From positions 11,780,001-11,844,000 of the forward strand of contig NC_043022.1 of the NCBI RefSeq assembly GCF_006345805.1: DNA of 64,000 nucleotides, in the 5' to 3' direction. Under the pieces are notes generated by a model. It saw nothing but the letters and a program-made list of their open reading frames with translations, was not told the origin of the DNA and did no database searches. The stretch comes from Octopus sinensis. Taxonomy: Eukaryota. A program made the translations under genes and the position numbers. Position 1 is the first letter of the stretch. Each line of letters begins with the position of its first letter. This document shows, one piece after another, positions 29,401 through 60,500 of this stretch.

Positions 29401-31173
29401 ACTGTACTTCTATGTGATATTTATATACAGCAAAGTAGAATATACCTCATTGTGGTACCTATCTGCAGTCTAATAGGCGCTGCATCTCATCATATATATA
29501 TATATATATAAAATCAAAATAAGTAACAAGAATGGCTCCGGTAATTTGGTACGATCGTTTCGTACTACATCATTTTATTAAATGTTGTAAGTATTACAAC
29601 AGTTTTAAAATGCTGAGCACTCATCAGCCAATTATAGAGGTTTTCCATTAACACAAAAATTTTCATGATACATAGACAAAGATGTGGATTTAAATTTTAA
29701 GAACATTTGAGGTAGTGGAACCCATCAACTGGCTGACTAAGATTCAGTTGTTCCAGACTACTGTAAGGTTCTGAGAGGGAAGAACAAATATATATATATA
29801 TGTGTGTGTAGTATTAATATTAGCAGAAGCAACAGAGTGACTCAAAATATGAGAGTTTCATGTGTAAGCTTAACTTAGGCTATTGGTCTTTTCTCGCTGA
29901 ACTGCTGTATATATATAATATAAATAAATAAATATATATATATATATATATATATAAACAGATTGTAACTGTAAACATGGTACATATTTAGTTACGTGGA
30001 CAGTTGATTGGTACCATGTTTGGGTACAGTCCAAATGACTAAAGACCAATATCATAGCAATGATGAAAACTGGTAAGCATCAACACATATATGTACCTCA
30101 GCATGTGTAGTGTCTTGAAAGCACCAACAGGAGAAGCGGTAGAGCAACAACAGGAAAAGGGCAGTGAAGGAAAAGGTGAAGGTGAAACACAGCAGTAGAG
30201 GAATAAGTGGTACTCACAACATAACAAGATTCACAATAAGGTTTGGTCTCGATAGCATAGAAAGATTTACCACGAAGGATGGTCCCTGGAAAGAGAAAGT
30301 GAAAGTTAGTTAGGGTACTTGCAGTGCGGTACTATATGGGGCGGCGAGCTGGCAGAACCGGTAGTGCGCCGGGCGAAATGCTTAGCGGCATTTCGTCTGA
30401 CGTTACGTTGTGAGCTCAAATTCCGCCGAGGTCGACTTTGCCTTTCATCCTTTCGGGGTCGATAAATTAAGTACCAGTTACGCACTGGGGTCGATCTAAT
30501 CGACTTAACCCCTTTGTCTGTCCTTGATTGTCCCTTCTATGTTTAGCCCCTTGTGGGCAATAAAGAAATAAGAAACGTTAGCACGCCAAGCAAAATACTT
30601 AGCGGTATTTTGTCTGCTGCTACGTTCTAAATTCAAATTCCGCCGAGGTCGACTTTGCCTTTCATCCTTTCGGGGTCGATTAAATAAGTACCAGTTACGC
30701 ACTGTGGTCAATATAATCGACTTAATCCGTTTGTCTGTCCTTGTTTGTCCTCTCTGTGTTTAGCCCCTTGTGGGTAGTAAAGAAATAGGTACTATATGTG
30801 CTGTAGTGTGTTGTGTAGCATGGTTTCACCTATAGTAGAGTGTAATGTCCTGGGCATAACTTTAAACTGCATCAGGTAGTGAGGCCCTGGTTAGGGAATT
30901 CCAGGGTTTCAAGCAGTGTGGAATTATATATATATATATATATAAATTAGATAATCAATTAAAACCAGTGGGTTAGCATATTTAAAAATCTGAAGATTAA
31001 AAATTGTGTTACATACAAAATTAAGAGGAATGGCCACTAAAGTGGACACCTAATATTCTAAACATACATGTTTTTCTTGAGAACACACTCTTCATGGTAA
31101 TGGCGATTTGACATCTATGTTTAGCATATTAGGTGTCCACTTTAGTGGTCATTGTTCTTAATTTTGTACATAT

Positions 31174-39152: not shown

Positions 39153-42100
39153 TATATATATATATATATAAATAAATAAATGGAGTTTAACACAGGTATA
39201 ATTCAAATACTTTTACTTCCGACACATGTTTCGAAGATTTCACTGACATTATTCCACGTAAACCCGAAATTTCTACCTTTAAAAACAACGAGCTACAACC
39301 TCTTTACTTGTGTGATTTTTTTGCTACCCTGGTAACTATTTATCTATTTTTTCCATGTTAATTGTTAACAACGGGAAAATACACTTACATATTTATATAT
39401 ATATATACAAACATACATACATACATACATACATACACACACACAGAGTCAACAGATGAAATCCAGAGATGCTCGATATAGAAAACACTTAATAGCGCTG
39501 AAATGATTTGAACTTACAATCCAAAATTTGTAGCGAGAACTAAGTCCATGGGGTAAAGAATCACTGTAAGGGGAATCCAAATGAGAAGATGTAGAGATAA
39601 TGATACAAATGAAACCGCTTGAGCCAGACATACAATATATACATATATACCAGCTTCTGTGCCAGTGGAACATAAAAGGCACCATTCGAGTGTGATCGTT
39701 ACCAGCGTCACCTTACTGGCACCTGTGTCGGTGGCATGTGTAAAAAGATTCGAGCGAGGTCGTTGCCAGTACCGCCTTACTGGCCCCGTGCCAGTGGCAC
39801 ATAAAAGGCACCATTCGAGTGTGATCGTTACCAGCGTCACCTTACTGGCACCTGTGTCGGTGGCATGTGTAAAAAGATTCGAGCGAGGTCGTTGCCAGTA
39901 CCGCCCGACTGGCCCCGTGCCGGTGGCAGGTAAAAAGCACCCACTACACTCTTGGAATGGTTGGAAGGGCATCCAGCTGTAGAAGCTCTGCCAGATCAAG
40001 ATTGGGGCCTGGTGTAGCCATCTGGTTCACCAGTCCTCAGTCAAAATCGTCCAACCCATGCTAGCATGGAAAGCGGACATCAAACGATGATGATGATGAT
40101 GATGGTACATATAAAAAGAGAGAAAACGAAGATGATAACATCATACCTCCTCCCCTTAACCCTTTAGTATTTAAACCGGCCATATCCAGCCAAAATATTT
40201 AATCTGTTTTATGTTCAAACTGACCAGATCCAGGCCCTCACACCTATCCTACAATGTTATTCTACATTAAGTAATTACACCATCAAGATCTTGAAGATAT
40301 GAGATAATGCATGATTAATTCAAATCAATGGGAATCAATAGACTTTATGTTTGATTGAATAATCTGAACACTAAAGGGTTAATAATACAAAAACAAGAGA
40401 AACGTGTAAAAAAAATTGACATAAAAAGAAAATTCCTTACTTTTCTCATAAACCTGATAATGAAATTGTTCCTGAGTTGCAACGAGGCGTTTGTTGAAGA
40501 GACTGCACAACTGGCAGTACAAGTAGCAGTGATCCTGCAGCTGATGTGGCAATGCATAGTTGCACTTCTGGCAATGTGATGCACCATCGCACTCGCACTG
40601 CTTGCACTGAGGAAATGAAATGCATTCCGGCTTTGCCCCACTACCCTCATTGAACAATACTGATGTGGGACAGAGACTGTCGAATGTCAGGTGACGGCAG
40701 AAATCCACAGACTCGAGTTCCTGTAGGGCTTGCTTTATTTTCTGCTCAATGTCCGTGAGGAAGGGCATCTCACTGTGATTGTCATTTGGATTTGTGATTT
40801 GTTTAGGGTTTTCATAAGAAGGGACGTACCAAGAAGGGGTGTGGATGACTGTGGTGCATGTGCTGGACCGTTGTTGTATAAGGGGTTCGAGTCTGTTAGA
40901 GGGGGTACTCAAATTGACAGAGTTAGGGTTGTTGTGGATGTGATTTAAAGATACGTGATCTCCATCAGATGGGACTGAGTTTGAAACCTCATCGAAACTT
41001 TCACAAATGTTAGGCTTGACATAGGCACCGTCTTGGCTGCTCTCGCAGAAATAACTCGTCGAGATGTAGGAGTTGAGATTGTAGCAAGAAGGAGAAGTGC
41101 GGAGTTTGCTTGGGAAACACTGAGGCGGGTCAGCATTGGTAGGAGTTACAGGGTCCGCACAGTCCGCGTCGGTTGACCCGTTTCCATGGAAACCTGCCTC
41201 CTGTGACATTGATATCTCATCGGCAGTTGTGTTCTGAGACATGCCGCCAATACTGCTGTCTTCGCAACATTCTCCAAAATCTTCATCCTTCAGGTAGTCA
41301 GGCATATCGGATTCTGACTTGAGACGGTAAATGACTTTGTTTATGCGTTGGTTCAGTTCTTCCGTATAAGTAAAAGCATCATCATCATCAGCATCAATAT
41401 CATCATCATCAACATCATCATCATCAGTGTCATTATTGGATAATGAGTCAATAAAGTTTTCTGAATTAGAAAGCTTTAAAGTGGAACAGCTGGAAAAGTG
41501 ACGTTCTTTGATGTTCTTTTTCTCATCCACGTATTTCACCTTATCAGGGGCACCGTCACTGCAGATATGATCATCATCATCATCAACATCATTGCTGTAA
41601 TTAACTTTGTAATAATCATGACACCTGTCATCATCATCATCATCATCATCTCCATGACCAACATCATCAGTGTCGTAATTATCTGTGGTATCAATCAACT
41701 GATTAGAATCCTTCCACGTTAAACACCTGTGGTCAGGTGAGGACTGGTCATCAATGCTTAAGACAAGACCAGTGTCCGGCTTCTCCACAAGTAGATCATT
41801 TGGTAACTCTACTTCCTCAGTTTCATCATCGCCTGACAACGAAGTATTCCCCGACACGATGGACCCATCAGAAGCACAACTGCTCACATCACAGTCCTTA
41901 CCGAGGTTATTCAAGTCCTCGCAGCTTTGACCAATTATTCTCAAAGTTCTCCACTTTGGATGAGGTCCTGCAAATGATTCCAGCTGTTTTATGATATTTC
42001 CGATGTTGCTAGCTCTTTCAGGAATTTTCCTGTTCTTTTTAAAATCCTCACAGTCTGAACATTTCGCGTTGGATATTTCCAGTTTTTTTACAATGTCCTG

Positions 42101-45100
42101 AACTTTAAGCAAGCACTGTGAATCCTGGAATTTATCAGAATTTTCGACAGTGGATGAATCAACGGGATTCTGTATTTCAGGAATGCTACAAGGGGGCACT
42201 GATATGCAGGTCATAGGTGTATTAATCTCAGTTAAACTTGAACTCCGACTTAAAGAAACAAAAGCCTTCGCAGAACCCCTCTTGGTGCTGTAAACAAAGC
42301 ACCGTTCCCCTATGTTAACCGATGGCGATGTAGGATTATTTCTCGACGTCTGTGACGATGTATTCTCTGCACAGTTCAATGCTGTCTCTTCACGGTTCAA
42401 CGCACCTTCTGTAAAGTTCTTTGCACAATTATTTTCATCTTCATTCCACACATCAGTTGGTGCCGATATTTGCTGCACGTGCAATGCTGTCTGGACAGGT
42501 GTTTCATTATCGATTCTGTTATCAAGTGAAGGTTGACCGATGTCCAAACAGGAATGAGTGGCTATTTGACCACAAGAAACCCAATCCTGGTCTGGAGTCC
42601 TGTCACCCGTGTCGGCAACACAGACAGGGCTGTTGCTCATATTTAAAGTAGGAAGGGTGGTCACTTGAACTGGTGTTTCTGATATAGATTGGCTGAGCAT
42701 TTGACTGGGACCACTGTCTCCATCAAGGGAAGAATTCGCTGAATCGTCCAGGGATTGATTTTGCAGCTTTTTATCAGCGGTCAAGGATATTTTGTTTTTA
42801 CTGGACTGGCAAGACTGCAACTCCATAAACCGAATGATGTCCCGCACACATTTCGATTTGCAACTGAGATCCTTCGTACATCTATCAGAGTGACGAGAAA
42901 GGTCACATTGGTATTCCCCATCACTGTTAAGTGCTTCCCAGAAACGCTCATGCTGCTGGGAACGAGGAGAAGATGGTCGAGAATATCGATGAAGATGATG
43001 ATGGTGATGGTGATGATGAAGATGTAGATGCCTATCTGGGCAATTAGAAGAAACGTCTACAATTACAGCACTTGGCTTTTCAAGTGCTCCACTTGCTGCA
43101 GAACGATCCAATTGAGATTTAATTCCGGTTGTGTGGAAATCAGAATGAGTAGAATGTATGGAATTGGGTGAAAAATCCTGAGCAGGAGAATCATTTGTGA
43201 CAGCAGCTGTCCTTGAACTGGTGTCACTGTCTTGGATTATGGACCTACCAAGGACAGAACCATCAAGTCTGGACTCGGATATCTCTTTTACTGAGGATAC
43301 TTCATTTGTAACACAAGGTTTTCTGTTACAGCAGGCAGGGGTCCCTAAATCTGAGCGCAAAACACCCCTTCTTTCAAATTGGAATTTTTTATCAGCAACA
43401 TGCCCGTTTGTACATTTTCCCTGGGGTTTTGCTGTTGATGATCTGCAGCAAACAGTCCTTTTAGGGGTCACACCTAACTGCGATAGTAAATCTTCAAGCC
43501 CCGTCGTAAGGGTCCTGTGAAGGATTTGGTTTAGTTCGTCATTGCTTTTCAAACTTTTTAAACATTCAAATGGCATATAAATACTTGCAAGTTCCGTGAG
43601 CAGTTTATCCGAAGACACAAAGTCCACGTTAGCGTTTTGATTGATGGAGTTCTCTTGGAATTGAACCAGCTTCACACCCAGGCTCCAGTTGCTGCTGTTG
43701 TGCTGTATCATCCAGTTTTTGAGGGTTTCCAGGACATACACATTATTTATCATGCTGCCATTATCTTCATCCTCCGCCTCATTCTCCTCCTCCTCTTCTT
43801 CTTCCCTGGAGTAATTCGACATGTCGACCTGCTGTGTAGAATTCAGGCCCGAACTGCAGGGGCCCCACAAAATCCGCATTTCCTGGAGGACTCGTGACAC
43901 GAACACGTGACTGCTCTCGCTCCTGACGACGTTGGGGAAACCAACAAGATGAAGGACATCGTGGAGGACCGTCGCAACATGTTGCGGCTTCTTGGACTCG
44001 ATGGCATGGAGAATGAGCGTCTTGCTGGCAGAATCCTGGTAACAGAAGATGTAGCTGTACTTCCAGTCAGAGAGAGATTCCATGTTGATTACGTTCATCA
44101 TGGCAGAACTTTGCACCATCTTAGGGTTGGATCTGGTGCCAGAATCAGTAAACATACTTGCTGTTGTTGTTGTTGTTGTTAGCAGTAATGATGGAGGTAA
44201 ACGGGGAGGAGATGAGGTTCAAACGGTGGTGCTATTTTAGTGGTAGTTGTTGTAATGATATTGTCGTTGTTGTTGTTGCTTGTTGCTGTTGTTGTTATTA
44301 TTATTATTATTGTTGTTGTTATTCTTGTTGTTGTTATTATTATTATTGTTGTTATTATTCTTGTTGCTGTTATTATTATTATTATTATTGTTGTTATTAT
44401 TGTTGTTGTTATTATTATTCTTGTTGTTATTATTATTCTTGTTATTATTCTTGTTGTTGTTGTTATTATTATTATTATTATTATTATTGTTGTTATTATT
44501 CTTGTTGTTGTTGTTATTATTATTATTGGTGTTGTTAGTGTTATGGTAGTTGTTGTGGTGGTGGTGGTGGTGGTTGTGACAGGGAGGAGATTAGGTTGTA
44601 ACAGTGGTATGCTATGCTTGTTGCTGTTGTTGTGGTGATATCATTGTTACTGTCGATGCGGTCAGTGTTATTGTTGCTGTTGTTGCGATGGTCATTGCTG
44701 TTGTTTGTTGTTGTTGTTGTTGTTGTTACTGTGATGTATTTACCATAATCATTGTTGTTGTTAAAAGTATTTTTCCCATAATATTTGCAAAGATTGTTGA
44801 TGTTGTTGGTAGTGGTGATGGTGATAATCCAGTAGTAGTAGTAGTAGTAGAAGTAGTAGTAGTAGTAGTAGCAGTAGTAATAGTAGTTATCCTCTGTTTC
44901 AGTCGCCAACTACTACATGTCTCCAAGTTGACGTAGTGTAGACTCAAAAGTGAGGTGTGATGGTCACACAAGGAAGGGGTATTCCCAACGTGTTGGAATC
45001 GCAGTATAAAAGCAAATCTCCATGCCGACCACCCAACCAGACACACAAACGGTAAGGGAGAGAGGGGGAGGGCTGTCTATCACACACGGTTCCATCTAAC

Positions 45101-46176
45101 ACGAAGGACGCAGGAACTAACCAAACTACTTGATACAAGCTCTGACACCCCTCAAAAAAATATCCCGAGATCTATTAAATTATCTCTTACTTGTTTATAC
45201 CATCCAGAAAGACCCAGGCCCTACATGACAACTGCCTGTTAGGGGCCTAGTTTTACTAAACTAAATGATACACCTCACAAAAATGACGCAGAATCTGCTA
45301 AAACTTTCAGTTATTAGTCTACAGTACACAGTAAAGGACCAGGATTTTGTAAATTAGTTGTTATTTAACACCGTGCAAAAAAGGCTCTGGATTTGCTAAA
45401 CTATCAGTAACAAGTTGGTACCACCCAGAAAACTATCATTACTTAGGAGACCGGTACTACTAAACTACCTAATACTAGTCAATACTTCACAAAAAACGGC
45501 CTCGGTTTTACTAAACTATCAGTAACTAGTTGGTACCACCCAGAAAACTGTCATTACTTAGGAGACCGGTACTACTAAACTAGCTAATACTAGTCAATAC
45601 CTCACAAAAAACGGCCTAGGATTTACTAAACTATCAGTAACTAGTTGGTACCACCCAGAAAACTGTCATTACTTAGGAGACCGGTACTACTAAACTAGCT
45701 AATACTAGTCAATACCTCACAAAAAACGGCCTAGGATTTACTAAACTATCAGTAACTAGTTGGTACCACCCAGAAAACTGTCATTACTTAGGAGACCGGT
45801 ACTACTAAACTAGCTAATACTAGTCAATACCTCACAAAAAACGGCCTAGGATTTACTAAACTATCAGTAACTAGTTGGTACCACCCAGAAAACTGTCATT
45901 ACTTAGGAGACCGGTTCTACTAAACTACCTAATACTAGTCAATACCTCACAAAAAACGGCCTAGGTTTTACTAAACTGTTACTAGTTACTAGTCGATACC
46001 AACAAGGAAGGCCAGCATTAGATATGGTAAACTGCGAGCACTAACTTTCTGTTTCACACTGTTACCACTTGTCGTTGTGGTCTCAGCAACTAGTCTCATA
46101 GTAGTCACCAGTCTCTCTCTCGGTCACATACACATTTTCTGTGTCTTTTTCTCTGTATGTGTGTCCTTCCCTCTTG

Positions 46177-46228
<52 letters not shown>

Positions 46229-49200
46229 ATCTTTTGTGTATCTGTGTATGATGCACACTGACTTTCATGTCACACACACACACATGCACATATGCACACA
46301 CACACACACACTGTTTGGCAACAGAATTAACTACACACCAAGAACTATCACATAACATAACATCCGGTAGGGGTGGTGGTGGTGGTGGTGGTGAGGGGTG
46401 GTGGTGGTGGTGAGGGGTGGTGGTGGTGGCAGTGGTGGTGAGGGGAGTTTTAGTGGGGCGTGTAGTTGTAACGGTAGGTGTGGTGGTGGTAATAACAATG
46501 AACTAAAACGATAGTGATGGTGGTGGTGGTGGTCGCAGTGGTGGTGCCGGGTTGGTGGATGAGGGGCGGGGTGCATGATAATGCATGGTGCTAGTAGTGT
46601 ATGTGTGTGTGTGTGTGTGGTGATGGTAGTTGCCTCAGTGGTGGTGGTGGTGATGGTGATTATGGTGGTGCTGATGGTGGTGGTGATTGTGGTGGTGATG
46701 GTGGTGGTGGTGGTGGTGGTGGTGATGGTGGTGGTGATGATGGTGGTGGTGGTGGTGGTGGTGATGGTGGTGGTGATGATGGTGGTGGTGATGGTGGTAG
46801 TGATGGTGGTGGTGATGGTGGTGATGGTGGTGGTGGTGATGGTGATGGTGGTGGTGATGGTGGTGGTGGTGATGGTGGTGGTAATTGTGGTGGTGATTGT
46901 GGTGGTGATGGTGGTGATGGTGATGATGGTGGTGATGATGGTGGTAGTGATGGTGGTGGTGATGGTGGTGATGGTGGTGGTGATGATGGTGATGATGGTG
47001 GTGTGGTGGTGGTGGTGATGGTGGTGGTGATGATGGTGGTGGTGGTGGTGGTGGTGGTGGTGGTGATGGTGGTGGTGGTGGTGCTGATGGTGGTGGTGAT
47101 GGTGGTAGTGATGGTGGTGGTGATGGTGGTGGTGGTGATGGTGATGATGGTGGTGGTGGTGATGGTGGTGGTGGTGATGGTGGTGATGGTGATGATGGTG
47201 GTGATGGTGGTGGTGGTGATGGTGATGATGGTGGTGGTGGTGATGGTGGTGGTGGTGATGGTGGTGGTGGTGATGGTGATTGTGGTGGTGATGGTGGTGA
47301 TGGTGATGATGGTGGTGATGGTGGTGGTGGTGATGGTGATGATGGTGGTGGTGGTGATGGTGGTGGTGGTGATGGTGGTGGTGGTGATGGTGGTGGTGAT
47401 TGTGGTGGTGATGGTGGTGATGGTGGTGGTGTGATGGTGGTGGTGATGGTGGTGATGGTGGTGGTGGTGATGGTGGTGGTGATGGTGGTGTGGTGGTGGT
47501 GAGTGGTGATGGTGGTGGTGGTGATGGTGGTGGTGATGGTGGTGATGGTGGTGGTGATGGTGGTGATGGTGGTGGTGATGGTGGTGATGGTGGTGGTGAT
47601 GGTGGTGATGGTGGTGGGGTGATGGTGGTGGTGGTGATTGTGTGGGTGTGATTGTGGTGGTGATGGTGGTGATGGTGATGATGGTGGTGATGGTGGGTGG
47701 TGGTGATGGTGATGATGGTGGTGGTGATGATGGTGGTGGTGGTGATGGTGGTGATGGTGATTGTGGTGGTGATGGTGGTGATGGTGATGATGGTGGTGAT
47801 GGTGGTGGTGGTGATGGTGATGATGGTGGTGGTGGTGATGGTGGTGGTGGTGATGGTGGTGGTGGTGATTGTGGTGGTGATTGTGGTGGTGATGGTGGTG
47901 ATGGTGGTGGTGGTGATGGTGGTGGTGATGGTGGTGATGGTGGTGGTGGTGATGGTGGTGGATGGTGGTGATGGTGGTGGTGATGGTGGTGATGGTGGTG
48001 GTGGGGGATGGTGGTGGTGATGGTGGTGATGGTGGTGGTGGTGATGGTGGTGGTGATGGTGGTGGTGGTGATGGTGGTGGTGGTGATGGTGGTGGTGATG
48101 GTGGTGATGGTGGTGGTGGTGATGGTGGTGGTGGTGATGGTGGTGGTGATGGTGGTGATGGTGGTGGTGGTGATGGTGGTGGTGGTGATGGTGGTGGTGG
48201 TGGTGGTGTGATGGTGGTGATGGTGGTGGTGGTGGTGGTGGTGATTGTGGTGGTGATGGTGGTGGTGGATGGTGTGATGGTGGTGGTGGTGATGGTGTGG
48301 TGATGGTGGTTTGATTGTGGTGGTGATGGTGGTGATGGTGATGATGGTGGTGATGGTGTGGTGGTGATGGTGATGATGGTGGTGATGGTGGTGGTGGTGA
48401 TGGTGGTGGTGATTGTGGTGGTGATGGTGGTGATGGTGATGATGGTGGTGATGGTGGTGGTGGTGATGGTGATGATGGTGGTGATGGTGGTGGTGGTGAT
48501 GGTGATGATGGTGGTGATGGTGGTGGTGGTGGTGGTGGTGGTGGTGATGGTGGTGGTGATGGTGGTGGTGGTGGTGGTGGGATGTGATGATGGTGGTGAT
48601 GTGGTGGTGGTGATGGTGATGATGGTGATGATGGTGGTGGTGGTGGTTGTGTGGGTGGTGATGGTGGTGGTGATGGTGTGTGGTGGTGGTGGTGATGGTG
48701 ATGATGGTGGTGATGGTGGTGGTGGTGATGGTGATGGTGGTGGTGATGATGGTGGTGGTGGTGATGGTGGTGATGTGTGGTGGTGATGGTGGTGGTGGAT
48801 TGGTGGTGGTGATGTGTGGTGATGGGGGTGGTGGTGGTGTGGTGAGGTGGTGATGGTGGTGGTGATTGTGGTGGTGATTGTGGTGGGTGATCGTGGTGAT
48901 GGTGATGATGGTGGTGATGGTGGTGGTGTGATGGTGGTGGTGATTGTGGTGGTGATTGTGGTGGTGATGGTGGTGGTGATGGTGGTGATGGTGGTGGTGG
49001 TGATGGTGGTGGTGATGGTGGTGGTGATGGTGGTGGTGGTGGTGGTGGTGGTGATGGTGGTGGTGGTGATGGTGATGGTGGTGATGGTGGTGGTGATGGT
49101 AGTGGTGATGGTGGTGGTGGTGGTGGTGGTGGTGATGGTGGTGGTGGTGATGGTGGTGGTGGTGATGGTGGTGGTGGTGATGGTGGTGGTGATGGTAGTG

Positions 49201-51800
49201 GTGGTGGTGGTGGTGGTGATGATGGTGGTGGTGACAAGGTGATAGCAATGCATGATGCTATTGAAGTGATGGTGGTGTTGGTAGTGGTAGTGGCGATGGT
49301 GGAGGTGATGGTGGGTGGTGGTGTTAGGTGGTGGTGGTGGTGATAGTGCTGGATGGTATTGAAGATACTTCAACTCCTTGACAATGCCATGCAGAGAGAG
49401 ACATACAGTATCTTCTTTTGCTTTTTTTATTTTTATTTGTTCTTTTTTTTCATATCATTGTTGGGTGGGGGGGGGCTGTTTTTATTATTTGTTTTTTTTT
49501 TCAAAGAGGCTGGAGATGACCAATTCTGTCACTGTAACAACAACAACAACAACAACAGCAGCCAGCAGCAGCAGCAGCAGCAGCAGGTGTGAGCCCATGA
49601 GAATGCCTCTATGTGATTGCATGACTTGCTAGAAATAGCAGCCAAATCTCACTTCAATCGCACATACACAATTGTAAAAAAAAAAAAAAATTGCATTGAA
49701 CAATAATAGTCCTAAATACACTATTCTTGTAAACTAGATGAGGTGGTCACAACAGGAACGGCTTTGTACTTAAGTTTGCATGATCAGGGCTGACCCAGGA
49801 CTAAACAACAACATGGCAAAGCACTATATATTTGTTTGATTTGCTAGAAATAGCAGCAAATCTTTAATTAACAAACTACCAACTGAAAAACTGGAAGGAC
49901 ACATTAGTTAATATAATCCTAGATACACCATGTCTGAATAAAGGATGAGATGGTCACAACAGGAACATCTCTGTTAAATGAGTATGAGTGTGTGTATATG
50001 TGCATACATGCATGTGAGTGTATGTGTGCACACATGCAAGTATTTGTGTACATACACCCGATTCCCCCTGCCCTTTTTTTCTTTCCTTAAATGACTCATT
50101 CACTGTTCACATCCGGTGCATGGTCCTAGGTATTGGTCATGCACACTTTTGGCTACATTTTCTGTGGAGTGGTAATGCACCCGAGCACGATATACAATAA
50201 GTTCATTATTGGCCGTGTGGCAAGTAGCTTGCTTACCAACCACATGGTTCCGGGTTCAGTCCCACTGCATGACAACTCGGCCAAGTGTCTTCTACTATAG
50301 CCTCGGGCTGACCAAAGCCTTGTGAGTGGATTTGGTAGACGGAAACTGAAAAGAAGCCCGTCGTATATATGTATGTATATATATATGTATGTGTATGCGT
50401 GTGTATATGTTTGCATGTCTGCGTTTGTCCCCCCAACATCGCTTGACAACCGATGCTGGTGTGTTTACGTCCACGTAACTTAGCAGTTCAGCAAAAGAGA
50501 CCGATAGAATAAGTACTAGGCTTACAAAAGAATAAATCCTGGGATCGATTTGTTCGACTAAAAGCGGTGCTCCAGCATGACCACAGTCAAATGACTGAAA
50601 CAAGTAAAAGAGTAAAAGAGTATTAATAATAATAATAATATGATCGTGAGGTTGTGAGTTCGAATCCCGGACCAGGTTGCGTGTTGCGTTCTTGAGCAAG
50701 ACACTTTATTTCACACTGCTCCAGTTCACTCAGCTGTAGAAATGAGTTGCGACGTCACTGGTGCCAAGCTGTATCGACCCCTTTGCCTTTCCCTTGGACA
50801 ACACTGGTGGCGTGGAGAGGGGAAGGCCGGTATGCATGGGCGACTGCTGGCTTTCCATAAACAATCTTGCCCTGACTTGTGCCTCGGGGGGTAACTTTCT
50901 AGGGGCAATCCCACGGTCAGTCATGACCGAAGGGGGTCTCAGCATTATTATTAATCGGGTTCAGTCCCACTGCGTGGCAATTTGGGTAGGTATCTTCTGC
51001 TATAGCCCCGAGCTGATCGAAGCTTTGTGATTCAATTCAGTAGGTGGAAGTTACTGCCGTGTGTGCATATGTGCGTGTAGGTGCTTGTGCCTCTCCGAAA
51101 GAGAGAGAGAGAGGGATAAAGGATTGGGGTAACTCTTCCAGAAGATATAGAGTCAAAATTAAAAGAAAAGAAGATTGCCATTGTGAAGACACACAAGATA
51201 TCGAAATATTGTTTACTAGATGACAACGGCACTCTTCTTTTAATTAGTAGTAGTGGTGGTGGTAGCGGCGGTGGCAGCAGTAGTAGTAGTAGTAGTATTT
51301 CCTTATGACCTTGTATGATAATTGTTAACGAACATCCTCATCACACAAGCGATGTACTTTGTCTCCATTCATCCTTGGAAACGTCCTGGTTATGGGAAGA
51401 TGTTACCTTGCATTGACATTGCTTGGAAAGAGGTAATGGTTGGCAACTGGAAGAGCACCCGACCATAGAAAATATGTCTCAACAAATTCTGTCTGATCCC
51501 TGCCGCCTCCGTGAAAGCACGGAAAAAATGGAACATTGGAATTATGATGATGATGATGATGATGACAACCTATATTTAAACACACAGAAAGTGGCACAGC
51601 TGTATAAATAGAAAGCACTCACAGCATGTGTGTGTGTGTGTGTGTATGTGTGTATATAAGTGTATACATACATGTGTGCATATATATATATATATATGTA
51701 TGCATACATATATGTGTGTGTGTATATGTATGTGTGTGTGGTGTGTGTATATGTATGTGTGTGTGGTGTGTGTATGTGTGTATATAAGTGTATACATACA

Positions 51801-51841
<41 letters not shown>

Positions 51842-54190
51842 TATATATGTATACATATAAGTGTGTGTGTATATGTATGTATATATATATACACACACAC
51901 ACACTTGTGAGAAAGAGAAACTGATAGAAGAGAAAGCGGATGCTACACACACACACACACACACGCACATGCACACACAAACGCACACACACACATTCTA
52001 ATTACAACGCTCATTAGGAGAGACAAGATCATAATTATCTTCGCCTGTATCAGAAACAACAATTATATTATTTATTTATTTATTTATCTATTTATTGGTA
52101 ACCATCATCATCATCACACTCACCATTGTAACTACCAACACCACCACCACCATCACCACATATCTATCAGTGCTGCCACCAACACCCAGGCCACTCCAAG
52201 CGCTATCCCTCAAACCTCATTAACCCAAAACTAAGTACAAATCCCTGGAAAATTTACTGCAGCCACAATTAATGTGTCATTACAAACACACACTCCATGC
52301 ATATATAAACACACACAAAGCAAAGCAAAGATCCTTCCGGAGGCAGAGGCTGATAAAGCTGATTTCTTGCATTCTGTGGCCTATATATTTGTATAATCCC
52401 TCGCTGGACGTTGATGCTAGTTTGTCGCAGGGTTATTTATATTCACCAGGTGAGAGGACCGGAAGAACAACATGAAACAAAGTGATTTTCTCAAGAACAC
52501 AATGCATCGCCCAGTCCAGGAATTGAAATCACAATCATATAATGATGACTGCAATACCCTAACCCAGCATTTCTCAACCGGGGTTCCCCCAAACCTTAGG
52601 GTTCTGCAAAGGGTTCCTATGGGTTCCGTGAGAAAGAGTGAGATAAGCTAATGCTAATTTCATGATGGTAATATTACTATCCATGCACATCATCATCATC
52701 ATTTAACGTCCATTCTCCATGGGTTGGATGGTTCGACCGGGGATCTGGGAAGCCGAAAGGCTGCGCCAGGCTCCAGTCTGATCTGGCAGTGTTTCTACAG
52801 CTGGATGCCCTTCCTAACGCCAACAAACTCCGAGAGTGTAGTGGCTGCTTTTTACGTGCCACCGGTGGTTATTGTAATATTGATAATCCTATTATCAAAA
52901 AAAAAATAACAATAGCGCAGGAGTCGCTGTGTGGTAAGTAGCTTGTTTACCAACCGCATGGTTCCGGGTTCAGTCCCACTGCGTAGCACCTTGGGCAAGT
53001 GTCTTCTACTATAGCCTCGGGCCGACCAAAGACTTGTGAGTGGATTTGGTAGACGGAAACTGAAAGAAGCCTGTCGTATATATGTATATATATGTATATG
53101 TATGTGTTTGTCCCCCTAGCATTGCTTGACAACCGATGCTGGTGTGTTTACATCCCCGTTACTTAGTGGTTCGGCAAAAGAGACCGATAGAATAAGTACT
53201 GGGCTTACAAAAGAATAAGTCCCAGGGTCGATTTGCTCGACTAAAGGCGGTGCTCCAGCATGGCCGCCGTCAAATGACTGAAACAAGTAAAAGAGTAAAG
53301 AGTAAGAGTAACCATTGGGGATATATTTAGTGATGTCTGTAATATATGGAGATGCTGTTGTGTACATACATCAATGACTGATGCATCTGGACACATCATC
53401 AGTAATGTGCTTGGAATCATCATGTGTTGGGTCTTTCAACCTCATACGCCCTCCTCCAGGTGATCCAGCTGGGGCTGATCAGACCGCAGTTTGTGTCCAG
53501 CTGACCAGTTAGCTACTCCCATGGCTCTCCTCTTTTGATCCACAGCCATCTTGAGGCCCTCTCTGCTGCATCGGTGGTACTGCGGATGGCCTTCCAAGGT
53601 GCCACGTAGTGGGACTGAAACTGGAACCATGTGGTTGGTAAGCAAGCTACTTACCACCTAGCCACTCCTTTACATACATATACATACATACATACATATA
53701 CATATATATATATATATAAATATAAAGGGGAAAAATTATTAAAAATAATAATTTATACAGGTGGCCAGCATGTGTAAAAAATTTCTGTAGACCATAAATA
53801 TTTTTATAATATATACGTGTGTATAAAATTATACACAAAGAGAAGGACCACCAAGTGGTCTTCCTACATGCTGAAAAGAGATGTCAAATCCCCGAATCCT
53901 CTTCACAGCATGTAGGAAGACCACTTAGTGGTCCTTCCCTTCATTGCATAATTTTATACACACATGTGTGTGTGTGTGTGTGCATGTATATATATATACA
54001 TACACATACATACATGGGTAGATTTGATTAATTTTCGTTGCTTTACTCTCTGCCTGTGTGAATAACCTTCAAGTATTTTGGTTTCTCTGGAAGACCCTTT
54101 TTAAAGTAGAAGAAATAGCTAAGATTTTTGGCTGCTATTTCTGAGCTTCGGTGTGTGGTGAAGCAAATCTTTGCTGAACCCTTTTTATTA

Positions 54191-54233
<43 letters not shown>

Positions 54234-55480
54234 TGAGTAAATGTATGTACACACACATATATATATAGATATATATATACACGCCATAATGTATGTTCAA
54301 AGAAAAGTAAAAAAAACTTTTAATAAGCTGCAGAAGATATACATTTATTACTGAACAGTTCATGACTCATTAAGTGCACACACACACACACACACTTGAA
54401 AAAAAAATCAGTCTCATAGGTATGTGTGTGGGTTTACGTGTGTGTGTATGTGTGTGTGTATGCGTGTGTGTGCACCCATATTATATCATGCAACAGTCAT
54501 TACAGAAATCACCTTTCCTGTAGTGACACACACAGAAAGACACACACACGCACATTCATGCATTCGAATATACACACAAACGCAACACAACACATACACA
54601 CACGCAACAGCGATTATGACAAATGATAAAACAGTAAGAAAACATAAATGACATCATCAACATCAACATCATCATCGTCATCATCAAGGTTCTGTCTAAA
54701 GAAAAAGCTAAAGTGACCAGCAGAGGTCAGACATCAGGGGGTCAAGGGTGAAAAAATGTCATGGGAATTTACCAGCATCTCTTCAACCACTAAAACCAAG
54801 ATGAGTAAGCTTCACTATTGGATGATCTCAAGAGTACACACTTCACAATAGTGTGGGGGAAGGCAGGACTTGAACGTAGGGGTGGGGGGTGTCCGTAGAT
54901 GTGATGGTGGTGGTGGTGGGGTGATGGTTGCATGATGGTGGCCATATGTGTAAAGACAGGCTACAGGTTAATTGATGGTGCTCCAGCATGGTCGTAGAAT
55001 GAGTGTTTGCATCTGAGTATGTATATTCATATTATGTAATAAATGTCATGTTTATAGAGTATGATATACGTGTGTGTGTGTGTGTGCATGCATGCATATA
55101 TGTGTGTATGTATGTGTGTGTGTGTGTGTGTATCATAATCATCATCATAGTTTAGCGTCCGCTTTCCATGCTAGCATGGGTTGGACGGTTCAACTGGGGT
55201 CTGGGAAGCCAGAAGGCTGCACCAGGCCCAGTCTGATCTGGCAATGTTTCTACAGATGGATGCCCTTCCTAACGCCAACCACTCCGTGAGTGTAGTGGGT
55301 GCTTTTTACGTGTCACCTGCACAGGTGCCAGACGAGGCTGGCTAACGGCCATGATCGGATGGTGTTTTTTACGTGCCACCAGCACGAGGCCAGTCGGGGT
55401 GGCGCTGGCAATGGACACGTTCGAATGGTTCTCATACATGCCACCAGCACTGGTATCACAGCTGCAATTTTCATTGATGT

Positions 55481-55517
<37 letters not shown>

Positions 55518-57467
55518 AGGCAGCGAGCTGGCAGAAACGTTAGTGCGCCAGGCAAAATGCATTAATTAGCATATCATAGAATTGCCTTCAGAAGAATGCC
55601 AGTCATAGATACCCCAATGGACTCATGCCAAATGAAGCCCTTCAGCTCTTAAGCTGCTCGTCCAATACAAATTCTGATAACTCCTGGGATTGTGACATTT
55701 GCACAAGACCAATAGAAGTTTAAAGAAAAGGAACATAGCACTGGCTCTGCACAAACCATGCTCAATAATTTAATAAACCCCTGCTGTCTTCTGGGGATAT
55801 CTCTCTTTACTCTTTTACTTGTTTCAGTCATTTGACTGTGGCCATGCTGGAGCACCGCCTTTAGTTGAGCAAATCGACCCCAGGATTTATTCTTTGTAAG
55901 CCTAGTACTTATTCTATCGGTCTCTTTTGCCGAACCGCTAAGTTACTGGAACATAAACACACTAGCATTGGTTGTCAAGCGATGTTGGGGGGAAAAACAC
56001 AGACACACAAACACATATATATATATACACATATATAAGACGGGCTTCTTTCAGTTTCCGTCTACCAAATCCACTCACAAGGCTTTGGTTGGCCTGAGGC
56101 TATAGTAGAAGACACTTGCCCAAGGTGCCATGCAGTGGGACTGAACCCAGAACCATGCGGTTCGTAAGCAAGCTACTTACCACACAGCCACTCGTACACC
56201 TATTGAGTGTTTATAAAGAGGTTAAGGGAATATTCTGAGGGAGTGATCCTAAGGCAGATATGTACAATTATATTTAACCAATATTTGGCATCCCTTGCAG
56301 CTGCAAAAGTTTCGACTTATCTATTCTTTGTGGTGTGTCATTGAGTGGAAAATGGGTTGGAGGAGTGTCACTTGAGTGATGCAAAGGGGGTCATCTCCCA
56401 GGAGTAGGGTATCAACAACAAATGATGGATGCAGCAACGCACAGTTACAGGGCATGTCCCCATATTACTGCTGCTTCTCCTTCTCATTCATAGCTTCTTT
56501 CTCCATTTCCCGTCTTCCTATGTAGTCTGACATTGTTTTTAGTTCCCCATCAGTTGCAGCCAATCACCCAAGCACAAAAGATCACAAACTTTTTTTTTTC
56601 TTCTCTCCTCTACCTATCCCCAGTCCATCATGTCAACCCCTGCAGATAGAAGCAGTTCAAATTTTGTACTTAATTTATTGACCCTAAAAGGATGAAAGTG
56701 GAGATGCAATGGCCCAGTGGTTAGGGCAGCAGATTTGCGGTTGGAGGATCGCAGTTTCGATTCCCAGACTGGGAGTTGTGTGTGTTTATTGAACGAAAAC
56801 ACCTAAAAGCTCCACGAGGCTCCAGCAGGGGGTGGTGGTGACCCCTATTGTACTCTTTCGCCCCGAATTTATCTCACTCTCTCTTCCTGTTTCTTGAGTA
56901 ACGCTGCGATGGACTGGCGTCCCGTCCAGCTGTGGGGAACACATACGCCACAGAAACTGGGAAACCAGGCCCATGAACCTGGCTAGGCTTGAAAAGGGCG
57001 ACGTTTCTCATTTTTTTAAGGGATGAAAGGCAAAGTTGACCTCAGTGGAATTTGTCTCAAGACATAAAGACAAACAAAACACTGCTGAGCATCCCCCCAC
57101 CCCGCATGCTAATCATTCTGCCATTTTGCCACCTTACAGACAGCAATATCACTTCACTTTTTCTGTTACATTTTCCAGTTAATATAGATATGTATATATA
57201 CACTCACACGTATATGTGTGTATAAAGATGTTATGTTTGTATTTGAAAATGTGTTGAACTGTGAAGTGTACACACACATCCATATATATGCATGAATATA
57301 TATGTATATATATACGTACACATGCATATATTACACACACACAAACATACATACATGCACAAATATTTAACCTCCTTGCAAAGAACAAACAGCAGCAACA
57401 AAGGTGGTGAAGGTGGCGTAGAACGTAAGAGAGAAATACAAGAAGGAAAGAGAAGTGGTAGAGAGAG

Positions 57468-57500
<33 letters not shown>

Positions 57501-60500
57501 AGAAAGATAGAGAGAAAGAAAGAGAGAGAAAGATAGAGAAAGAAGAAAAAAGAAAGAAAGAAGGAAGAAAGAAGGAAAAAGAAAGAAAGAAGAGAAAAGA
57601 AAGCGAGAGAGGAGAGAACAAAGAAAGAAAGAAGGAAGAAGGAGAAGGACAGACAGACAGACAGACAGACAGACGAAGAACAGACAGAAAGAAAGAGAGA
57701 GCGAAAGAAAGAGAGAAGAAAGAGAGAGAGAGAAAAAGAGAGAAGGAAATGAAAGAGAGAGAAAGAAAGAAAGAAAGAAGAGAGAAAGAAAGAGAGAAAG
57801 AAAGACAGAAAGAAAGAATAGAGAAATAAGAAAGAGAGAGTGAAAGAAAAAGAAAGAGAGTGAAATAAAGAGAGAAAAAGAAAGAAAAGAATAAAGAAAA
57901 GAGAGTAAGAAGAAAGAAAGAAAGAAAGAAAGAAAAGAAAGAAGAAGAAAGAAGGAAAGAGAGAAAAAGAAAGAAAGAAGAGAAAGAAAGAAAGAAAAGA
58001 AAGAAAGAAAGAAGAAAGAGAAAGAAGAAGGAAAGAAAGAAAGAGAAAGAAAGAAAGAGAGAAAGAAAGAGAGAAAGAAAGAAAGAAAGAAGAAAGAAAG
58101 AAAAAGAAAGAAAGAAAGAAAAAGAAGAAAGAAAGAGAGAGAGAGAGAAAGCCACCGGCAGAGTGTGCAAAGGTGAAGTAATGTGGGTGAACTTACCACA
58201 GCTGTCACAGATAAAGCAGTCAATATGAAAAACTTGATCCATCGCTGTACAGCCATTGCTCGGACCCACCACACGATGGCCACATTTGGAACACATTCCT
58301 AAATAGAGACAAGACAAACAAAAAAAAAAGAAAGAAAATGGATAAAGAGATAGAAATGAATATAAAAGAACAACAATATACAGGTAAAAGAGTTGTTGCT
58401 ACTGCTGCACCCACGAATTTTTACCTTTACCTCTTGTTCTGTTTGAACCTAGAATAAACACGACCTCAAACAACACTAGTCTCTCACACTGGTGCAGCTT
58501 TGATAAGCTTGTACGGTCTATCTATCTTTCTATTTGTCTATAATACACATATAGAGACACATATATATATACACCTATGTACAACTTTGCCTCCTCCGAC
58601 TCCTCTGTCTTGTCGAAATGAGAAAAAAGGAGGAGGAAGAAAGAGAAAGGACACACTAAGGGGACATAAGCAGTCATTTGTGGGGGGGGGAGAGAGAAGG
58701 AAGAAAAAAGGCATAAAAGAAACAGTATAGAAAGAGAGCAGGGGAATGCGGTTAATAGGAGTGGTTAAGGAGGTGAAGGGGAAGAACGAAATTAGGGGAA
58801 TTAAAGCAATTAAGAGCAGGACAAAAAAAGGTGAAAAGTTTTTTTTAGAAAATTCGTTTTTGTTTTTTTTTTTAAAGAAATCTCAAAAATTGCTTCAAAA
58901 AAGAAATTTTTTAAAAAGTTTTTTAAGCTTAAACTTCACATATATGGAAGCACTCCGTCGGTTACGACGACGAGGGTTCCGGTTGATCCGAATCAACGGA
59001 ACAGCCTGCTCGTGAAATTAACGATAAAGTGGCTGAGCACTCCACAGACACGTGTACCCTTAACGTAGTTCTAGGGGATATTCAGCGTGACACAGAGAGT
59101 GACAAGGCCGGCCCTTTGAAATACAGGTACAACAGAAACAGGAAGTAAGAGTGAGAGAAAGTTGTGGTGAAAGAGTACAGCAGGGATCACCACCACCCCC
59201 TGCCGGAGCCTCGTGGAGCTTTTAGGTGTTTTCGCTCAATAAACACTCACAACGCCCGGTCTAGGAATCGAAACCGCGATCCTACGACCGCGAGTCCGCT
59301 GCCCTAACCCCTCAAATACAAAGAGAATGAAGAACGAACATACAGAGAGAAAGACGGTTACGATGAGACAGTCGGACACGGACAACACAAGGGAGATAAC
59401 TTTTCGTTTAATGCCAGAAAAAGATTTTCATTTCTGTTTAGATTAACCACAAGAAGCAATTTTGGAAAGGAATTGAGCGATGCCACGCAGTGGGACTGAA
59501 CCTGGAACCATGTGGTTGGTTAGCAAGCTACTTATCACGCAGCCACTCCTGCGCCTCTGCAAAATATTAACACTGAATATACTTTTGATCTTTCACTTTC
59601 AGCCCCCCACCCACTAGACTGTGTGTGGTGCTCTAGCATGGCCACAGAACATTGAGTTTAACCAGTAAAAGAACACAAGAATATTTGGTAATGCCAGTAG
59701 ATCGCATAGAAAGTTTGGCAATCTTTCGTCTCTAGTAGACCTTTCCGTCGATTTCCGTAAAAAAATTTTTTTTTTTTTACATATGGGCTTGCGGGAACTT
59801 TTGAAGTAATGAGAGCGAAAGAGACTAAGAGAAAGCGATTGTATGACGAGGGAAGTTCTTTTGAAGTTACCGTCCAGGGGAGCATTGATGGACATGTGTG
59901 TGTGTGTGTGTTTGATGGGGTGTGGGAGACAGACAGTATGTTGTGTAAGTGAAGTGCTTCTGTTAATGTGTGTGAAGAGACAGAGAGAGTAATGTGTGAA
60001 AGAAAGAGATAACTGAAATTTTTTACTCGGTGTATGTGTATATGTATGTATATTACTTCAAAAGTTCCCGCAAGCCCATATGTGAAAAGAAAAATTTTTT
60101 TACGGAAATCGACGGAAAGGTCTACTAGAGACGAAAGATCACCGAAAGTTTGTTACTTACCAAAGAAGTCAGGATCACCAGCAGACTCAATGTTTTGCAT
60201 CAACAAACTAGTCAAGGCATCTACTTCTGCTTCTTTGCCCACCTTCCTACCATCGGACCGAGGTAGGGAGTTCGTGGTGTAGCTGCCTGCCGGACTGGAA
60301 GCAGCGAGAGGGCTAGGGTTGACGGGATCCGAATACCCCGGGTATTTGTGCTGCTGTGGCAACGCTTGAACGGGTGCTTTGTAGCTGACCGACTGCTGAG
60401 GAGTACCGACACCAATCCCACCGCCAACCACAGCACTAGCGCTGCTGTGGACATTGGAGTAGCTCGGCACGGCCTGGGAGGGGCCCTGGGGTGGAGGGGG

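What the first reader, a model, noticed from the sequence alone, without database searches (positions are those of the whole stretch)
40441..58197. Giant exon is splice-phase compatible with LPP: possible LPP-integrase chimeric isoform that breaks LIM1
Seen: the upstream LPP exon ends in phase 1 (G|gtaagt, 58197). Just before the ORF's ATG there is a branch-point-like TGCTAAC, then (AAC)n and CAG| at 44161, which would start the exon in phase 1 (G|CA AGT ATG, in frame). The donor at 40441 is also phase 1, giving a 3720-nt exon divisible by 3. It could be (a) an alternative 3' branch giving Pro-rich LPP N-terminus + half LIM1 + dead integrase, without LIM2/3 and the TTEL PDZ motif; (b) a cassette rejoining 30285 in frame (A|GG); or (c) an independent gene whose exon can splice onto the LIM exons. 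Each would be an unusual switch in a mechanosensing adaptor. Caveat: the acceptor has no polypyrimidine tract next to the AG, and there are in-frame stops at 44219 and 44237 upstream.
Basis: partly seen in the sequence, partly recalled or inferred. Interest (0 to 1): 0.8.

Follow-up and report, generated by a model that had tools for sequence, protein, structure and literature searches.

The report
Domesticated dead integrase exon inside LPP
A 3.7-kb exon in the intron that splits the first LIM domain of the octopus LPP gene encodes an old, catalytically dead, transposon-derived integrase with a long acidic tail.

Summary
The window is the Octopus sinensis LPP locus on the minus strand. The phase match carries little information: the donor phase is forced, and the acceptor match is a 1-in-3 event among only two available AGs.

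The 1258-codon ORF is real coding sequence. It is intact in O. vulgaris with dN/dS 0.21 (P = 5e-13). Pieces of it, with the same phase-1 donor, occur in a distant cephalopod.

Residues ~15-175 are a KRBA2/GINGER2-type integrase core. All three catalytic residues and the HHCC domain are lost, so "dead integrase" is right.

NCBI already annotates reading (c). LOC115224746 X1/X2 starts at the ORF's own ATG and splices 40441 to 30285 into LIM1b-LIM2-LIM3. A separate 360-aa model joins the LPP N-terminus and LIM1a to a short terminal exon (52044-51998). Canonical 511-aa LPP is annotated in O. vulgaris.

Nothing supports the headline junction 58197 to 44160. Its acceptor is the weakest in the locus and no model uses it. 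RNA reads could not be examined here.

Verdict: a new member of a known kind (a domesticated integrase fused to host exons), of moderate interest.

The parts
60161..60928 (-). LPP proline-rich N-terminal exon (768 nt, phase 1 at both ends; holds the FPPPP motifs)
   Evidence: ORF. Boundaries read. Matches residues 56-311 of P0154 and P0183.
58197..58298 (-). LIM1a exon: first zinc finger plus the first CxxC of the second finger of LIM1; phase 1-1; donor G|gtaagt
   Evidence: protein P0154/P0183.
51998..52044 (-). Short alternative terminal exon (G|GC GAA ... TAG). It ends the 360-aa NCBI model 'extensin' (LPP N-terminus plus half LIM1).
   Evidence: 12 of 12 residues are conserved in O. vulgaris.
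44161..44186 (-). It sits inside a microsatellite; pyrimidine content is 0.40.
   Evidence: The AG is retained in O. vulgaris but the repeat has changed.
44217..44239 (-). In-frame stops TGA (44221-44219) and TAA (44239-44237) that close the ORF upstream
40441..44155 (-). Giant coding exon, from ATG 44155 to the last exon base 40441 (1238 codons plus 1 nt). It is the first coding exon of LOC115224746.
   Evidence: dN/dS is 0.21 against O. vulgaris.
43631..44113 (-). Integrase catalytic-core relic (aa ~15-175), KRBA2/GINGER2-like. First D is N, second D is E, and the E segment is missing.
43745..43846 (-). Acidic low-complexity insert (aa ~104-137) in place of the HPQSQG..ER segment that carries the third catalytic residue; pLDDT about 50
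41852..42142 (-). Conserved island (aa 672-768, includes the ..[12 protein letters not shown].. motif) shared with the distant cephalopod
41410..41625 (-). 216-nt segment missing from NCBI isoform X2. Its ends are GG..TG, inside GAT/GAC repeats.
40442..40876 (-). Conserved C-terminal part of the giant exon (aa 1094-1238) with a Cys/His cluster (C, C, C, H, H, C, C, C invariant in three species)
   Evidence: No known family was found. The AF2 model is not confident.
40435..40440 (-). Donor gtaagg after GAG AAA A (phase 1). Position, phase and AAAA|gtaag are conserved in the distant cephalopod.
30218..30285 (-). LIM1b exon (second half of LIM1). It is the shared acceptor for LIM1a (G|GG, Gly) and for the giant exon (A|GG, Arg).
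23273..28882 (-). Remaining LIM2/LIM3 exons: 28882-28835, 26536-26406, 25946-25826, 23401-23273 (ends ..TTEL, followed by the stop)

Best explanation
The giant exon is an anciently domesticated integrase gene of the KRBA2/GINGER2 type. It sits in the phase-1 intron that splits LIM1 of the octopus LPP gene.

What the exon has lost and kept:
- It has lost the HHCC domain, all three catalytic residues and any transposon ends.
- It has acquired about 1000 residues of acidic, serine-rich and mostly low-complexity sequence, with a few conserved islands and a C-terminal Cys/His cluster.
- It is maintained by purifying selection.

How it most likely works:
- It acts as an alternative first coding exon. 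Transcription starts inside the LPP intron and translation starts at ATG 44155.
- The exon's phase-1 donor (40441) competes with the LIM1a donor (58197) for the LIM1b acceptor (30285).
- The product is: dead integrase core, long disordered acidic region, Cys/His cluster, half of LIM1, LIM2, LIM3, C-terminal TTEL. It has none of LPP's proline-rich N-terminus.

The same locus also gives canonical LPP (58197 to 30285). It probably also gives a truncated N-terminal form ending in exon 52044-51998.

Shown here: the homology, the dead active site, the selection, the orthology and the conserved donor. Inferred: the own promoter, use of the 40441 to 30285 junction (gene model only), and any cellular role. 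A possible role is bringing a new N-terminal module to LIM2/LIM3/PDZ partners, or competing with LPP for them.
For: (1) NCBI models XP_029651497.1 (X1) and XP_036369609.1 (X2) begin at the ORF's ATG and read ..QVYEK|RTILRGKSF.. into the LIM exons.

(2) 169 HMMER hits with E<=1e-3. Nearly all fall on aa 15-220, against proteins named 'KRAB-A domain-containing protein 2-like' or 'Integrase catalytic domain-containing protein'.

(3) A profile of these relatives hits PFV integrase at 6e-18 and Ty3 at 2.6e-8. The AF2 model (pLDDT 75; 90+ over aa 20-70) has only retroviral integrase cores as its top PDB matches.

(4) The alignment shows VDLIDM changed to MNVINM, SDNG changed to SESS, and the SQG.VER segment replaced by an acidic run.

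(5) O. vulgaris has the same ATG, the same donor and an intact 1257-codon ORF. dN is 0.015, dS 0.073, dN/dS 0.21, P = 5e-13. The 3 indels are all in frame, against about 5.6 gap openings per kb in the flanking introns.

(6) A second, distant cephalopod (ENA ERZ21867824) has colinear orthologous pieces, 51-56% identical in the core. It shows the same D-to-E change and the same TTTGAAAAAA|gtaag phase-1 donor.

(7) No LTR or TIR flanks the exon.
Against: - The 40441 to 30285 junction and the independent start rest on a predicted gene model. No RNA reads could be examined here.
- The Iso-Seq-informed O. vulgaris annotation calls only canonical LPP at this locus and no giant-exon transcript.
- In the distant cephalopod the orthologue is broken into at least four frame pieces. 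The breaks lie at A8, A6 and (TG)n runs. This could be assembly error or decay.
- NCBI isoform X2 has a non-canonical GG..TG 'intron', which shows that the transcript evidence at this locus is not clean.
Confidence: 0.7

Rival explanations
1. LPP's N-terminal exons and LIM1a splice into the giant exon at 44160. The product is proline-rich LPP, then half of LIM1, then dead integrase, either ending there or rejoining the LIM exons as a cassette.
For: - The arithmetic is correct: G|CA AGT ATG is in frame and the exon is 3720 nt.
- A TGCTAAC branch-like motif lies 19-25 nt upstream of the AG.
- The AG is retained in O. vulgaris.
- The architecture would resemble known host-N-terminus plus transposase fusions made by alternative splicing (abstract of bioRxiv 10.1101/2020.05.07.082677).
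Against: - No annotated protein contains this junction. X1 and X2 start at the ATG, and the LPP N-terminal model ends in exon 52044-51998.
- O. vulgaris has only canonical LPP.
- The acceptor's pyrimidine content is 0.40 with no T, the lowest of the eight acceptors compared.
- The acceptor lies in a microsatellite that differs between sister species.
- The phase match is a 1-in-3 coincidence.
- In the distant cephalopod the acceptor-like sites upstream of the open frame are in phase 0, not phase 1.
Confidence: 0.07
2. A stand-alone nested gene. The ORF is translated to its own stop at 40379 and is not spliced to the LIM exons, so the NCBI fusion model is an over-extension.
For: - The ORF closes 20 codons after the donor, and similarly in the distant cephalopod.
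- The O. vulgaris annotation does not join it to LPP.
- Conservation of GAAAAAAGTAAG could partly reflect coding of ..EKSK.
Against: - The strong consensus donor AAA|gtaagg lies in the one phase that fits the LIM1b acceptor. Its position and phase are conserved in a cephalopod whose protein is only 36% identical in that region.
- Two NCBI isoforms use the junction.
Confidence: 0.12
3. Gene fission. In Octopus the insertion has split LPP into two genes (N-terminal 'extensin' and integrase-LIM), and canonical LPP is no longer made.
For: - NCBI's O. sinensis annotation has two non-overlapping genes and no 511-aa product.
- A second octopod model, P0156, also follows LIM1a with non-LIM1b sequence.
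Against: - Canonical 511-aa LPP is annotated in O. vulgaris.
- Other cephalopods make canonical transcripts: 13 Logan contigs of 489-497 aa. The giant-exon orthologue occurs in a non-octopus cephalopod whose own LPP N-terminal exon resembles those transcripts.
- All zinc ligands of both LIM1 halves are conserved from octopus to chiton. This is expected only if the halves are still joined.
Confidence: 0.08
4. A decaying transposon relic whose long ORF is fortuitous and has no function.
For: - The catalytic residues are gone and much of the sequence is low complexity.
- The frame is broken in the distant cephalopod assembly.
Against: - dN/dS is 0.21 with P = 5e-13, and only in-frame indels are seen.
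- Conserved islands persist across a divergence at which LPP's own N-terminal exon is only 38% identical.
- 1258 open codons at 42-44% GC.
Confidence: 0.02

Closest known systems
KRBA2 / SCAND3 (ZBED9)-type 'cellular integrases' derived from GINGER2 cut-and-paste transposons
   Same: - The N-terminal 15-220 residues align with E down to 1e-13 to proteins that NCBI and UniRef name KRAB-A domain-containing protein 2-like or Integrase catalytic domain-containing protein.
- PMC3575427 (abstract) derives the KRBA2 and SCAND3 integrase domain from the GINGER2 clade.
- Like them, this is a single-copy host gene with no transposon ends.
   Different: - The HHCC domain and all three DDE residues are lost, and the segment with the third residue is replaced.
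- It is fused to LIM domains rather than to KRAB, SCAN or zinc-finger modules.
- About 1000 extra residues of unknown origin follow the core.
- No phylogeny was built here, so clade membership rests on best hits and names.
Host-transposase fusion genes formed by transposase capture (alternative splicing onto an intronic transposase ORF), for example CSB-PGBD3 (recalled from my own knowledge)
   Same: A mobile-element ORF lying in an intron of a host gene is joined in frame to host exons and kept by selection. Capture primarily through alternative splicing is stated in the abstract of bioRxiv 10.1101/2020.05.07.082677.
   Different: - Here the element-derived part is N-terminal, with its own ATG, and donates a donor site to the host's 3' exons. 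It does not accept the host's 5' exons.
- The captured partner is a cytoskeletal LIM adaptor, not a DNA-binding or KRAB module.
- The junction cuts a LIM domain in half.
Zyxin/LPP/TRIP6 family LIM adaptors
   Same: - The host gene is the octopus LPP orthologue. It has an FPPPP-rich N-terminus, three C-terminal LIM domains and a C-terminal TTEL.
- It is 511 aa in O. vulgaris and colinear with LPP of chiton, abalone and bivalves.
- The giant-exon product shares LIM1b, LIM2, LIM3 and TTEL.
   Different: The giant-exon product lacks the whole proline-rich N-terminus, and also the first zinc finger and half of the second finger of LIM1. It is therefore not a canonical family member in architecture.

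Membership tests
Retroviral-type (rve, DDE) integrase, KRBA2/GINGER2-like | Significant sequence similarity of the catalytic core to family members | tested here: met
   phmmer against 1.84e9 proteins gave 169 hits with E<=1e-3 on aa 15-220. A profile of these hits matches PFV integrase at 6e-18, MMTV and Ty3. Close relatives hit the IS481 transposase model at 1e-18. The octopus piece alone hits it only at 0.025.
Retroviral-type (rve, DDE) integrase, KRBA2/GINGER2-like | RNase H-like core fold | tested here: met
   AF2 gave pLDDT 75 overall, with 90+ for b1-b3/a1 and for the helices at aa 138-173. All top Foldseek PDB matches are ASV, MMTV or PFV integrase cores: E about 1e-3, about 82 residues at about 3 A, TM only 0.3-0.4. 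The middle of the core (aa 104-137) is not modelled with confidence.
Retroviral-type (rve, DDE) integrase, KRBA2/GINGER2-like | D, D, E catalytic triad | tested here: not met
   In alignment A1 the first D is N (C in the distant cephalopod), the second D is E in both, and the SQG.VER segment is absent in both.
Retroviral-type (rve, DDE) integrase, KRBA2/GINGER2-like | N-terminal HHCC zinc-binding domain | tested here: not met
   The octopus ORF begins about 20 residues before the first core strand, and upstream lie stops and microsatellite. The distant cephalopod keeps only an in-frame relic (..EYKN..).
Active GINGER/LTR-type mobile element | Terminal repeats (TIR or LTR) and multiple close copies | tested here: not met
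   No direct or inverted repeats other than microsatellites and SINE-like repeats flank the exon. No paralogue above 34% identity appeared among the hits. The whole genome could not be searched.
Host-transposase (integrase) fusion gene | Element-derived ORF joined in frame to host exons in one mRNA | tested here: inconclusive
   Present in two NCBI predicted isoforms, with a conserved phase-1 donor. No RNA reads were available to these tools, and the junction is absent from the O. vulgaris annotation.
Host-transposase (integrase) fusion gene | Purifying selection and orthology of the element-derived part | tested here: met
   dN/dS 0.21 with P = 5e-13 against the syntenic O. vulgaris copy. Colinear pieces occur in a distant cephalopod.
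Zyxin/LPP/TRIP6 LIM adaptors (applied to the giant-exon product) | Three complete tandem C-terminal LIM domains | tested here: not met
   The product enters at LIM1b, so six of the eight LIM1 ligands (C, C, H, C, C, C) are encoded only by exon 58298-58197. The exon's own Cys/His cluster has different spacing and lies 39 residues from the final CxxC.
Zyxin/LPP/TRIP6 LIM adaptors (applied to the host gene) | Proline-rich FPPPP N-terminus plus three LIM domains, colinear with LPP orthologues | tested here: met
   All exons are in the window. The 511-aa O. vulgaris LPP homologue P0183 and molluscan LPP homologues align throughout.

The most novel reading that the evidence does not exclude
The LPP locus of coleoid cephalopods may be a conserved three-way switch. 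Promoter and splice choice would decide between three outcomes: LIM1 assembled intact (canonical LPP), discarded together with the LIM tail (the N-terminal 'extensin' form), or replaced by a dead-integrase module. In the third case the module's conserved Cys/His cluster would pair with the orphan half of LIM1 to form a hybrid zinc module. That would give a mechanosensing adaptor a transposon-derived alternative head that has been kept for a long time.
Probability: 0.2. Interest if true: 0.6.

Novelty: new member of a known kind. Interest (0 to 1): 0.4.

Why it matters
If the gene model is right, this is a clear invertebrate example of a transposon-derived integrase domesticated by fusion to a host gene's exons.

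- It has an unusual polarity: the element supplies the 5' end and a donor site.
- It has an unusual partner: a focal-adhesion LIM adaptor, rather than a transcription-factor module.
- It cuts a LIM domain in two. This makes a natural test of how many LIM domains the zyxin family needs for targeting.

On the practical side, two current annotations of sister species disagree at this locus (a split into two genes versus canonical LPP only). NCBI's names 'extensin' and 'uncharacterized protein' hide both the LPP identity and the integrase origin.

Tried and rejected
- Single-sequence phmmer of aa 1-230 against PDB found only noise. PHROGs found nothing.
- An Rfam scan of 30-59 kb found nothing.
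- A search for LTRs or TIRs around the exon found only microsatellites and SINE-like repeats.
- I tested whether the exon's C-terminal Cys/His cluster is the CxC tail of KRBA2-like proteins. hhalign gave probability 0.1 and the PDB profile gave no hit, so this is rejected.
- The AF2 model of the C-terminal 163 residues from a 3-sequence alignment had pLDDT 38, which is unusable.
- I searched for the tail of octopod model P0156 (after LIM1a) in the window and in O. vulgaris. There was no orthologous exon. The best match (E 0.02-0.03) is a motif inside the giant exon, and I judged it chance or unexplained.
- Look-up of isoform X2 on contigs found nothing on record.
- Literature searches for octopus LPP, the accession numbers and the ENA sample gave no papers.
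- The LIM1a exon was not found within 10 kb downstream of the N-terminal exon in the distant cephalopod. LIM exons were not found within 10 kb downstream of its giant exon. Linkage in that species could therefore not be shown.
- A model of the hybrid junction (exon end plus LIM1b) was not attempted. A spliced product has no reference, and I would have had to type it in.

Full report
LOCUS

The window is Octopus sinensis chromosome sequence (GCA_006345805.1, CM016884.1, about 11.8 Mb). It carries the LPP orthologue on the minus strand. I placed these exons:

- The proline-rich N-terminal exon, 60928-60161 (768 nt, phase 1-1).
- LIM1a, 58298-58197 (102 nt, phase 1-1).
- LIM1b, 30285-30218, followed by 28882-28835, 26536-26406, 25946-25826 and 23401-23273, ending ..TTEL.

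The 27.9-kb intron between LIM1a and LIM1b contains the 1258-codon ORF 44155..40379 on the same strand.

OBSERVATION

The coincidence is weak.

- Only two AGs lie between the upstream stop and the ATG, and one of them is in phase 1.
- The donor phase is not independent, because it must match LIM1a if both feed 30285.
- The two preceding LPP exons are also phase 1-1.

WHAT THE EXON ENCODES

A HMMER search of residues 1-1200 against 1.84 billion representatives gave 169 hits with E<=1e-3. Nearly all fall on residues 15-220.

The named relatives are 'KRAB-A domain-containing protein 2-like' or 'Integrase catalytic domain-containing protein'. A profile of them matches PFV integrase (6e-18), MMTV integrase and Ty3, and the IS481 transposase model (1e-18). 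PMC3575427 places the KRBA2/SCAND3 integrase in the GINGER2 transposon clade.

In the alignment the family consensus QVDLIDM ... LQSDNG.EF ... HPQSQGS.ER reads as follows in octopus:

- MNVINM: the first D is N.
- VRSESSHVF: the second D is E.
- An acidic low-complexity run stands where the third residue should be.

The HHCC domain is absent.

An AlphaFold model (pLDDT 75) keeps the b1-b3/a1/b4/a2 half of the core and two later helices with high confidence. Its best PDB matches are exclusively retroviral integrase cores. 'Dead integrase' is therefore correct.

The following ~1000 residues are acidic and serine-rich (pI 4.7). Outside orthologues they match nothing.

IS IT A REAL CODING EXON?

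The syntenic O. vulgaris locus (L004, OX597839.1) has the same ATG, the same donor and an intact 1257-codon ORF.

- Nei-Gojobori counts give 53.5 synonymous and 44.5 non-synonymous changes: dS 0.073, dN 0.015, dN/dS 0.21. The binomial P is 5e-13 against neutrality.
- The three indels are all multiples of three. Flanking introns show 3-5% substitutions and about 5.6 gap openings per kb.

Three further hits (P0004, P0005, P0019) are colinear pieces on one contig of ENA assembly ERZ21867824.

- The animal is a cephalopod whose LPP N-terminal exon is only 38% identical to Octopus. It is probably a decapodiform, but that is inference.
- Its integrase block is 51-56% identical to Octopus and the C-terminal block 36%.
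- It shares the D-to-E change and the loss of the E segment.
- Its exon ends TTT GAA AAA A|gtaag, the same position and phase as in Octopus.
- Its frame is broken at least four times, at (TG)n, A6 and A8 runs. I cannot tell assembly error from decay.

HOW IT IS CONNECTED

NCBI already annotates LOC115224746 isoforms X1 (1404 aa) and X2 (1332 aa). They begin at ATG 44155, run to 40441, and continue ..YEK|RTILRGKSF.. through LIM1b-LIM3.

A separate upstream NCBI gene, named 'extensin' (XP_029651391.1, 360 aa), joins the LPP N-terminus and LIM1a to a 47-nt terminal exon, 52044-51998. That exon is conserved in O. vulgaris.

No canonical LPP is annotated in O. sinensis. The O. vulgaris annotation does have it: 511 aa..CDSCG|TILRGKSF... 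That annotation used Iso-Seq, RNA-seq and protein alignments (PMC10700109), and it calls no other gene at the locus.

Other cephalopods have canonical transcripts (Logan contigs of 489-497 aa). All zinc ligands of both LIM1 halves are conserved across molluscs. Canonical splicing is therefore almost certainly retained in Octopus.

Nothing links LPP's 5' exons to 44160.

- No model uses that junction.
- The acceptor's pyrimidine content is 0.40, against 0.60-0.95 for seven acceptors that are used.
- It lies in a microsatellite that differs between the sister species.

Isoform X2 lacks 41625-41410, with GG..TG ends inside GAT/GAC repeats. This suggests a template-switch artefact or a deletion allele. 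It also implies that transcript data cover the exon, which is inference from how Gnomon works.

MECHANISM AND RIVALS

The best explanation (confidence 0.7) is an internal promoter and an own ATG. The element-derived exon would use its phase-1 donor to capture the LIM1b acceptor, in competition with LIM1a.

The rivals are:

- A stand-alone nested gene ending at 40379 (0.12).
- True gene fission (0.08).
- A functionless relic (0.02).

The conserved C-terminal Cys/His cluster might complement the orphan half of LIM1. Its spacing is not LIM-like, it has no detectable relatives, and it could not be modelled.

COMPARISON, NOVELTY AND LIMITS

This is a domesticated integrase in the KRBA2/SCAND3 tradition, and a host-element fusion in the sense of transposase capture.

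- It fails the tests for a functional integrase: no DDE triad and no HHCC domain.
- It fails the tests for an active element: no terminal repeats.
- Its polarity is reversed relative to the usual fusions.
- Its partner is a LIM adaptor.

The gene model exists but is unnamed, and I found it in no paper. I rate it a new member of a known kind, of moderate interest.

The decisive data are junction reads, 5' ends and peptides. They lie outside these tools.

Noticed in passing
window 46638-49342: A 2.7-kb (GTG)n/(CAC)n microsatellite (about 901 units) in the LPP intron. It creates the spurious 860-970-aa ORFs in several frames and the extreme GC skew. The O. vulgaris copy is only about 0.6 kb (L004 18422-19034).
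   Followed up: partly
window 45376-45977: A 115-bp tandem repeat, 5.2 copies, 97% matches, about 1.2 kb upstream of the giant exon's ATG.
   Followed up: no
L003 1-8700 (ENA ERZ21867824 ctg121405l): The first ~8.6 kb of this 305-kb contig is 65-70% GC and carries bacterial-type genes (PhnG, PhnI/J, ABC transporter, DctP-like). GC then drops abruptly to 26-42% in animal DNA, about 1 kb before the giant-exon orthologue. This is most likely a chimeric join at the contig end rather than a gene transfer.
   Followed up: partly
window 41410-41625: NCBI isoform X2 removes exactly this 216-nt stretch. Its ends are GG..TG, not GT..AG, inside GAT/GAC (poly-Asp) repeats. It looks like a template-switch or alignment artefact, or a deletion allele, rather than a true intron.
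   Followed up: yes
window 51998-52044 and P0154: NCBI names the LPP N-terminal half-gene 'extensin', evidently because of its proline-rich composition. The model ends inside LIM1 with a 15-residue tail from a small exon that is conserved in O. vulgaris. Sister-species annotations disagree on whether LPP is one gene or two.
   Followed up: partly
P0156 (UniParc UPI000695964C; no window coordinates): An octopod protein model, 88% identical to the O. sinensis N-terminal exon, follows LIM1a with a 20-residue tail that has no counterpart in the window or in O. vulgaris. Its best, weak match (E about 0.02-0.03) is the conserved ..[11 protein letters not shown].. motif inside the giant exon (window 41992-41954). 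This is unexplained.
   Followed up: partly
L002 7106-7277: In the distant cephalopod the frame stays open for 57 codons upstream of the first ATG. It still aligns to the HHCC region of KRBA2-like integrases (..EYKN.. against KYKN). Acceptor-like tttttag/ttgcag sites precede it in phase 0, so in that species the exon may be internal, with a start codon further upstream.
   Followed up: no
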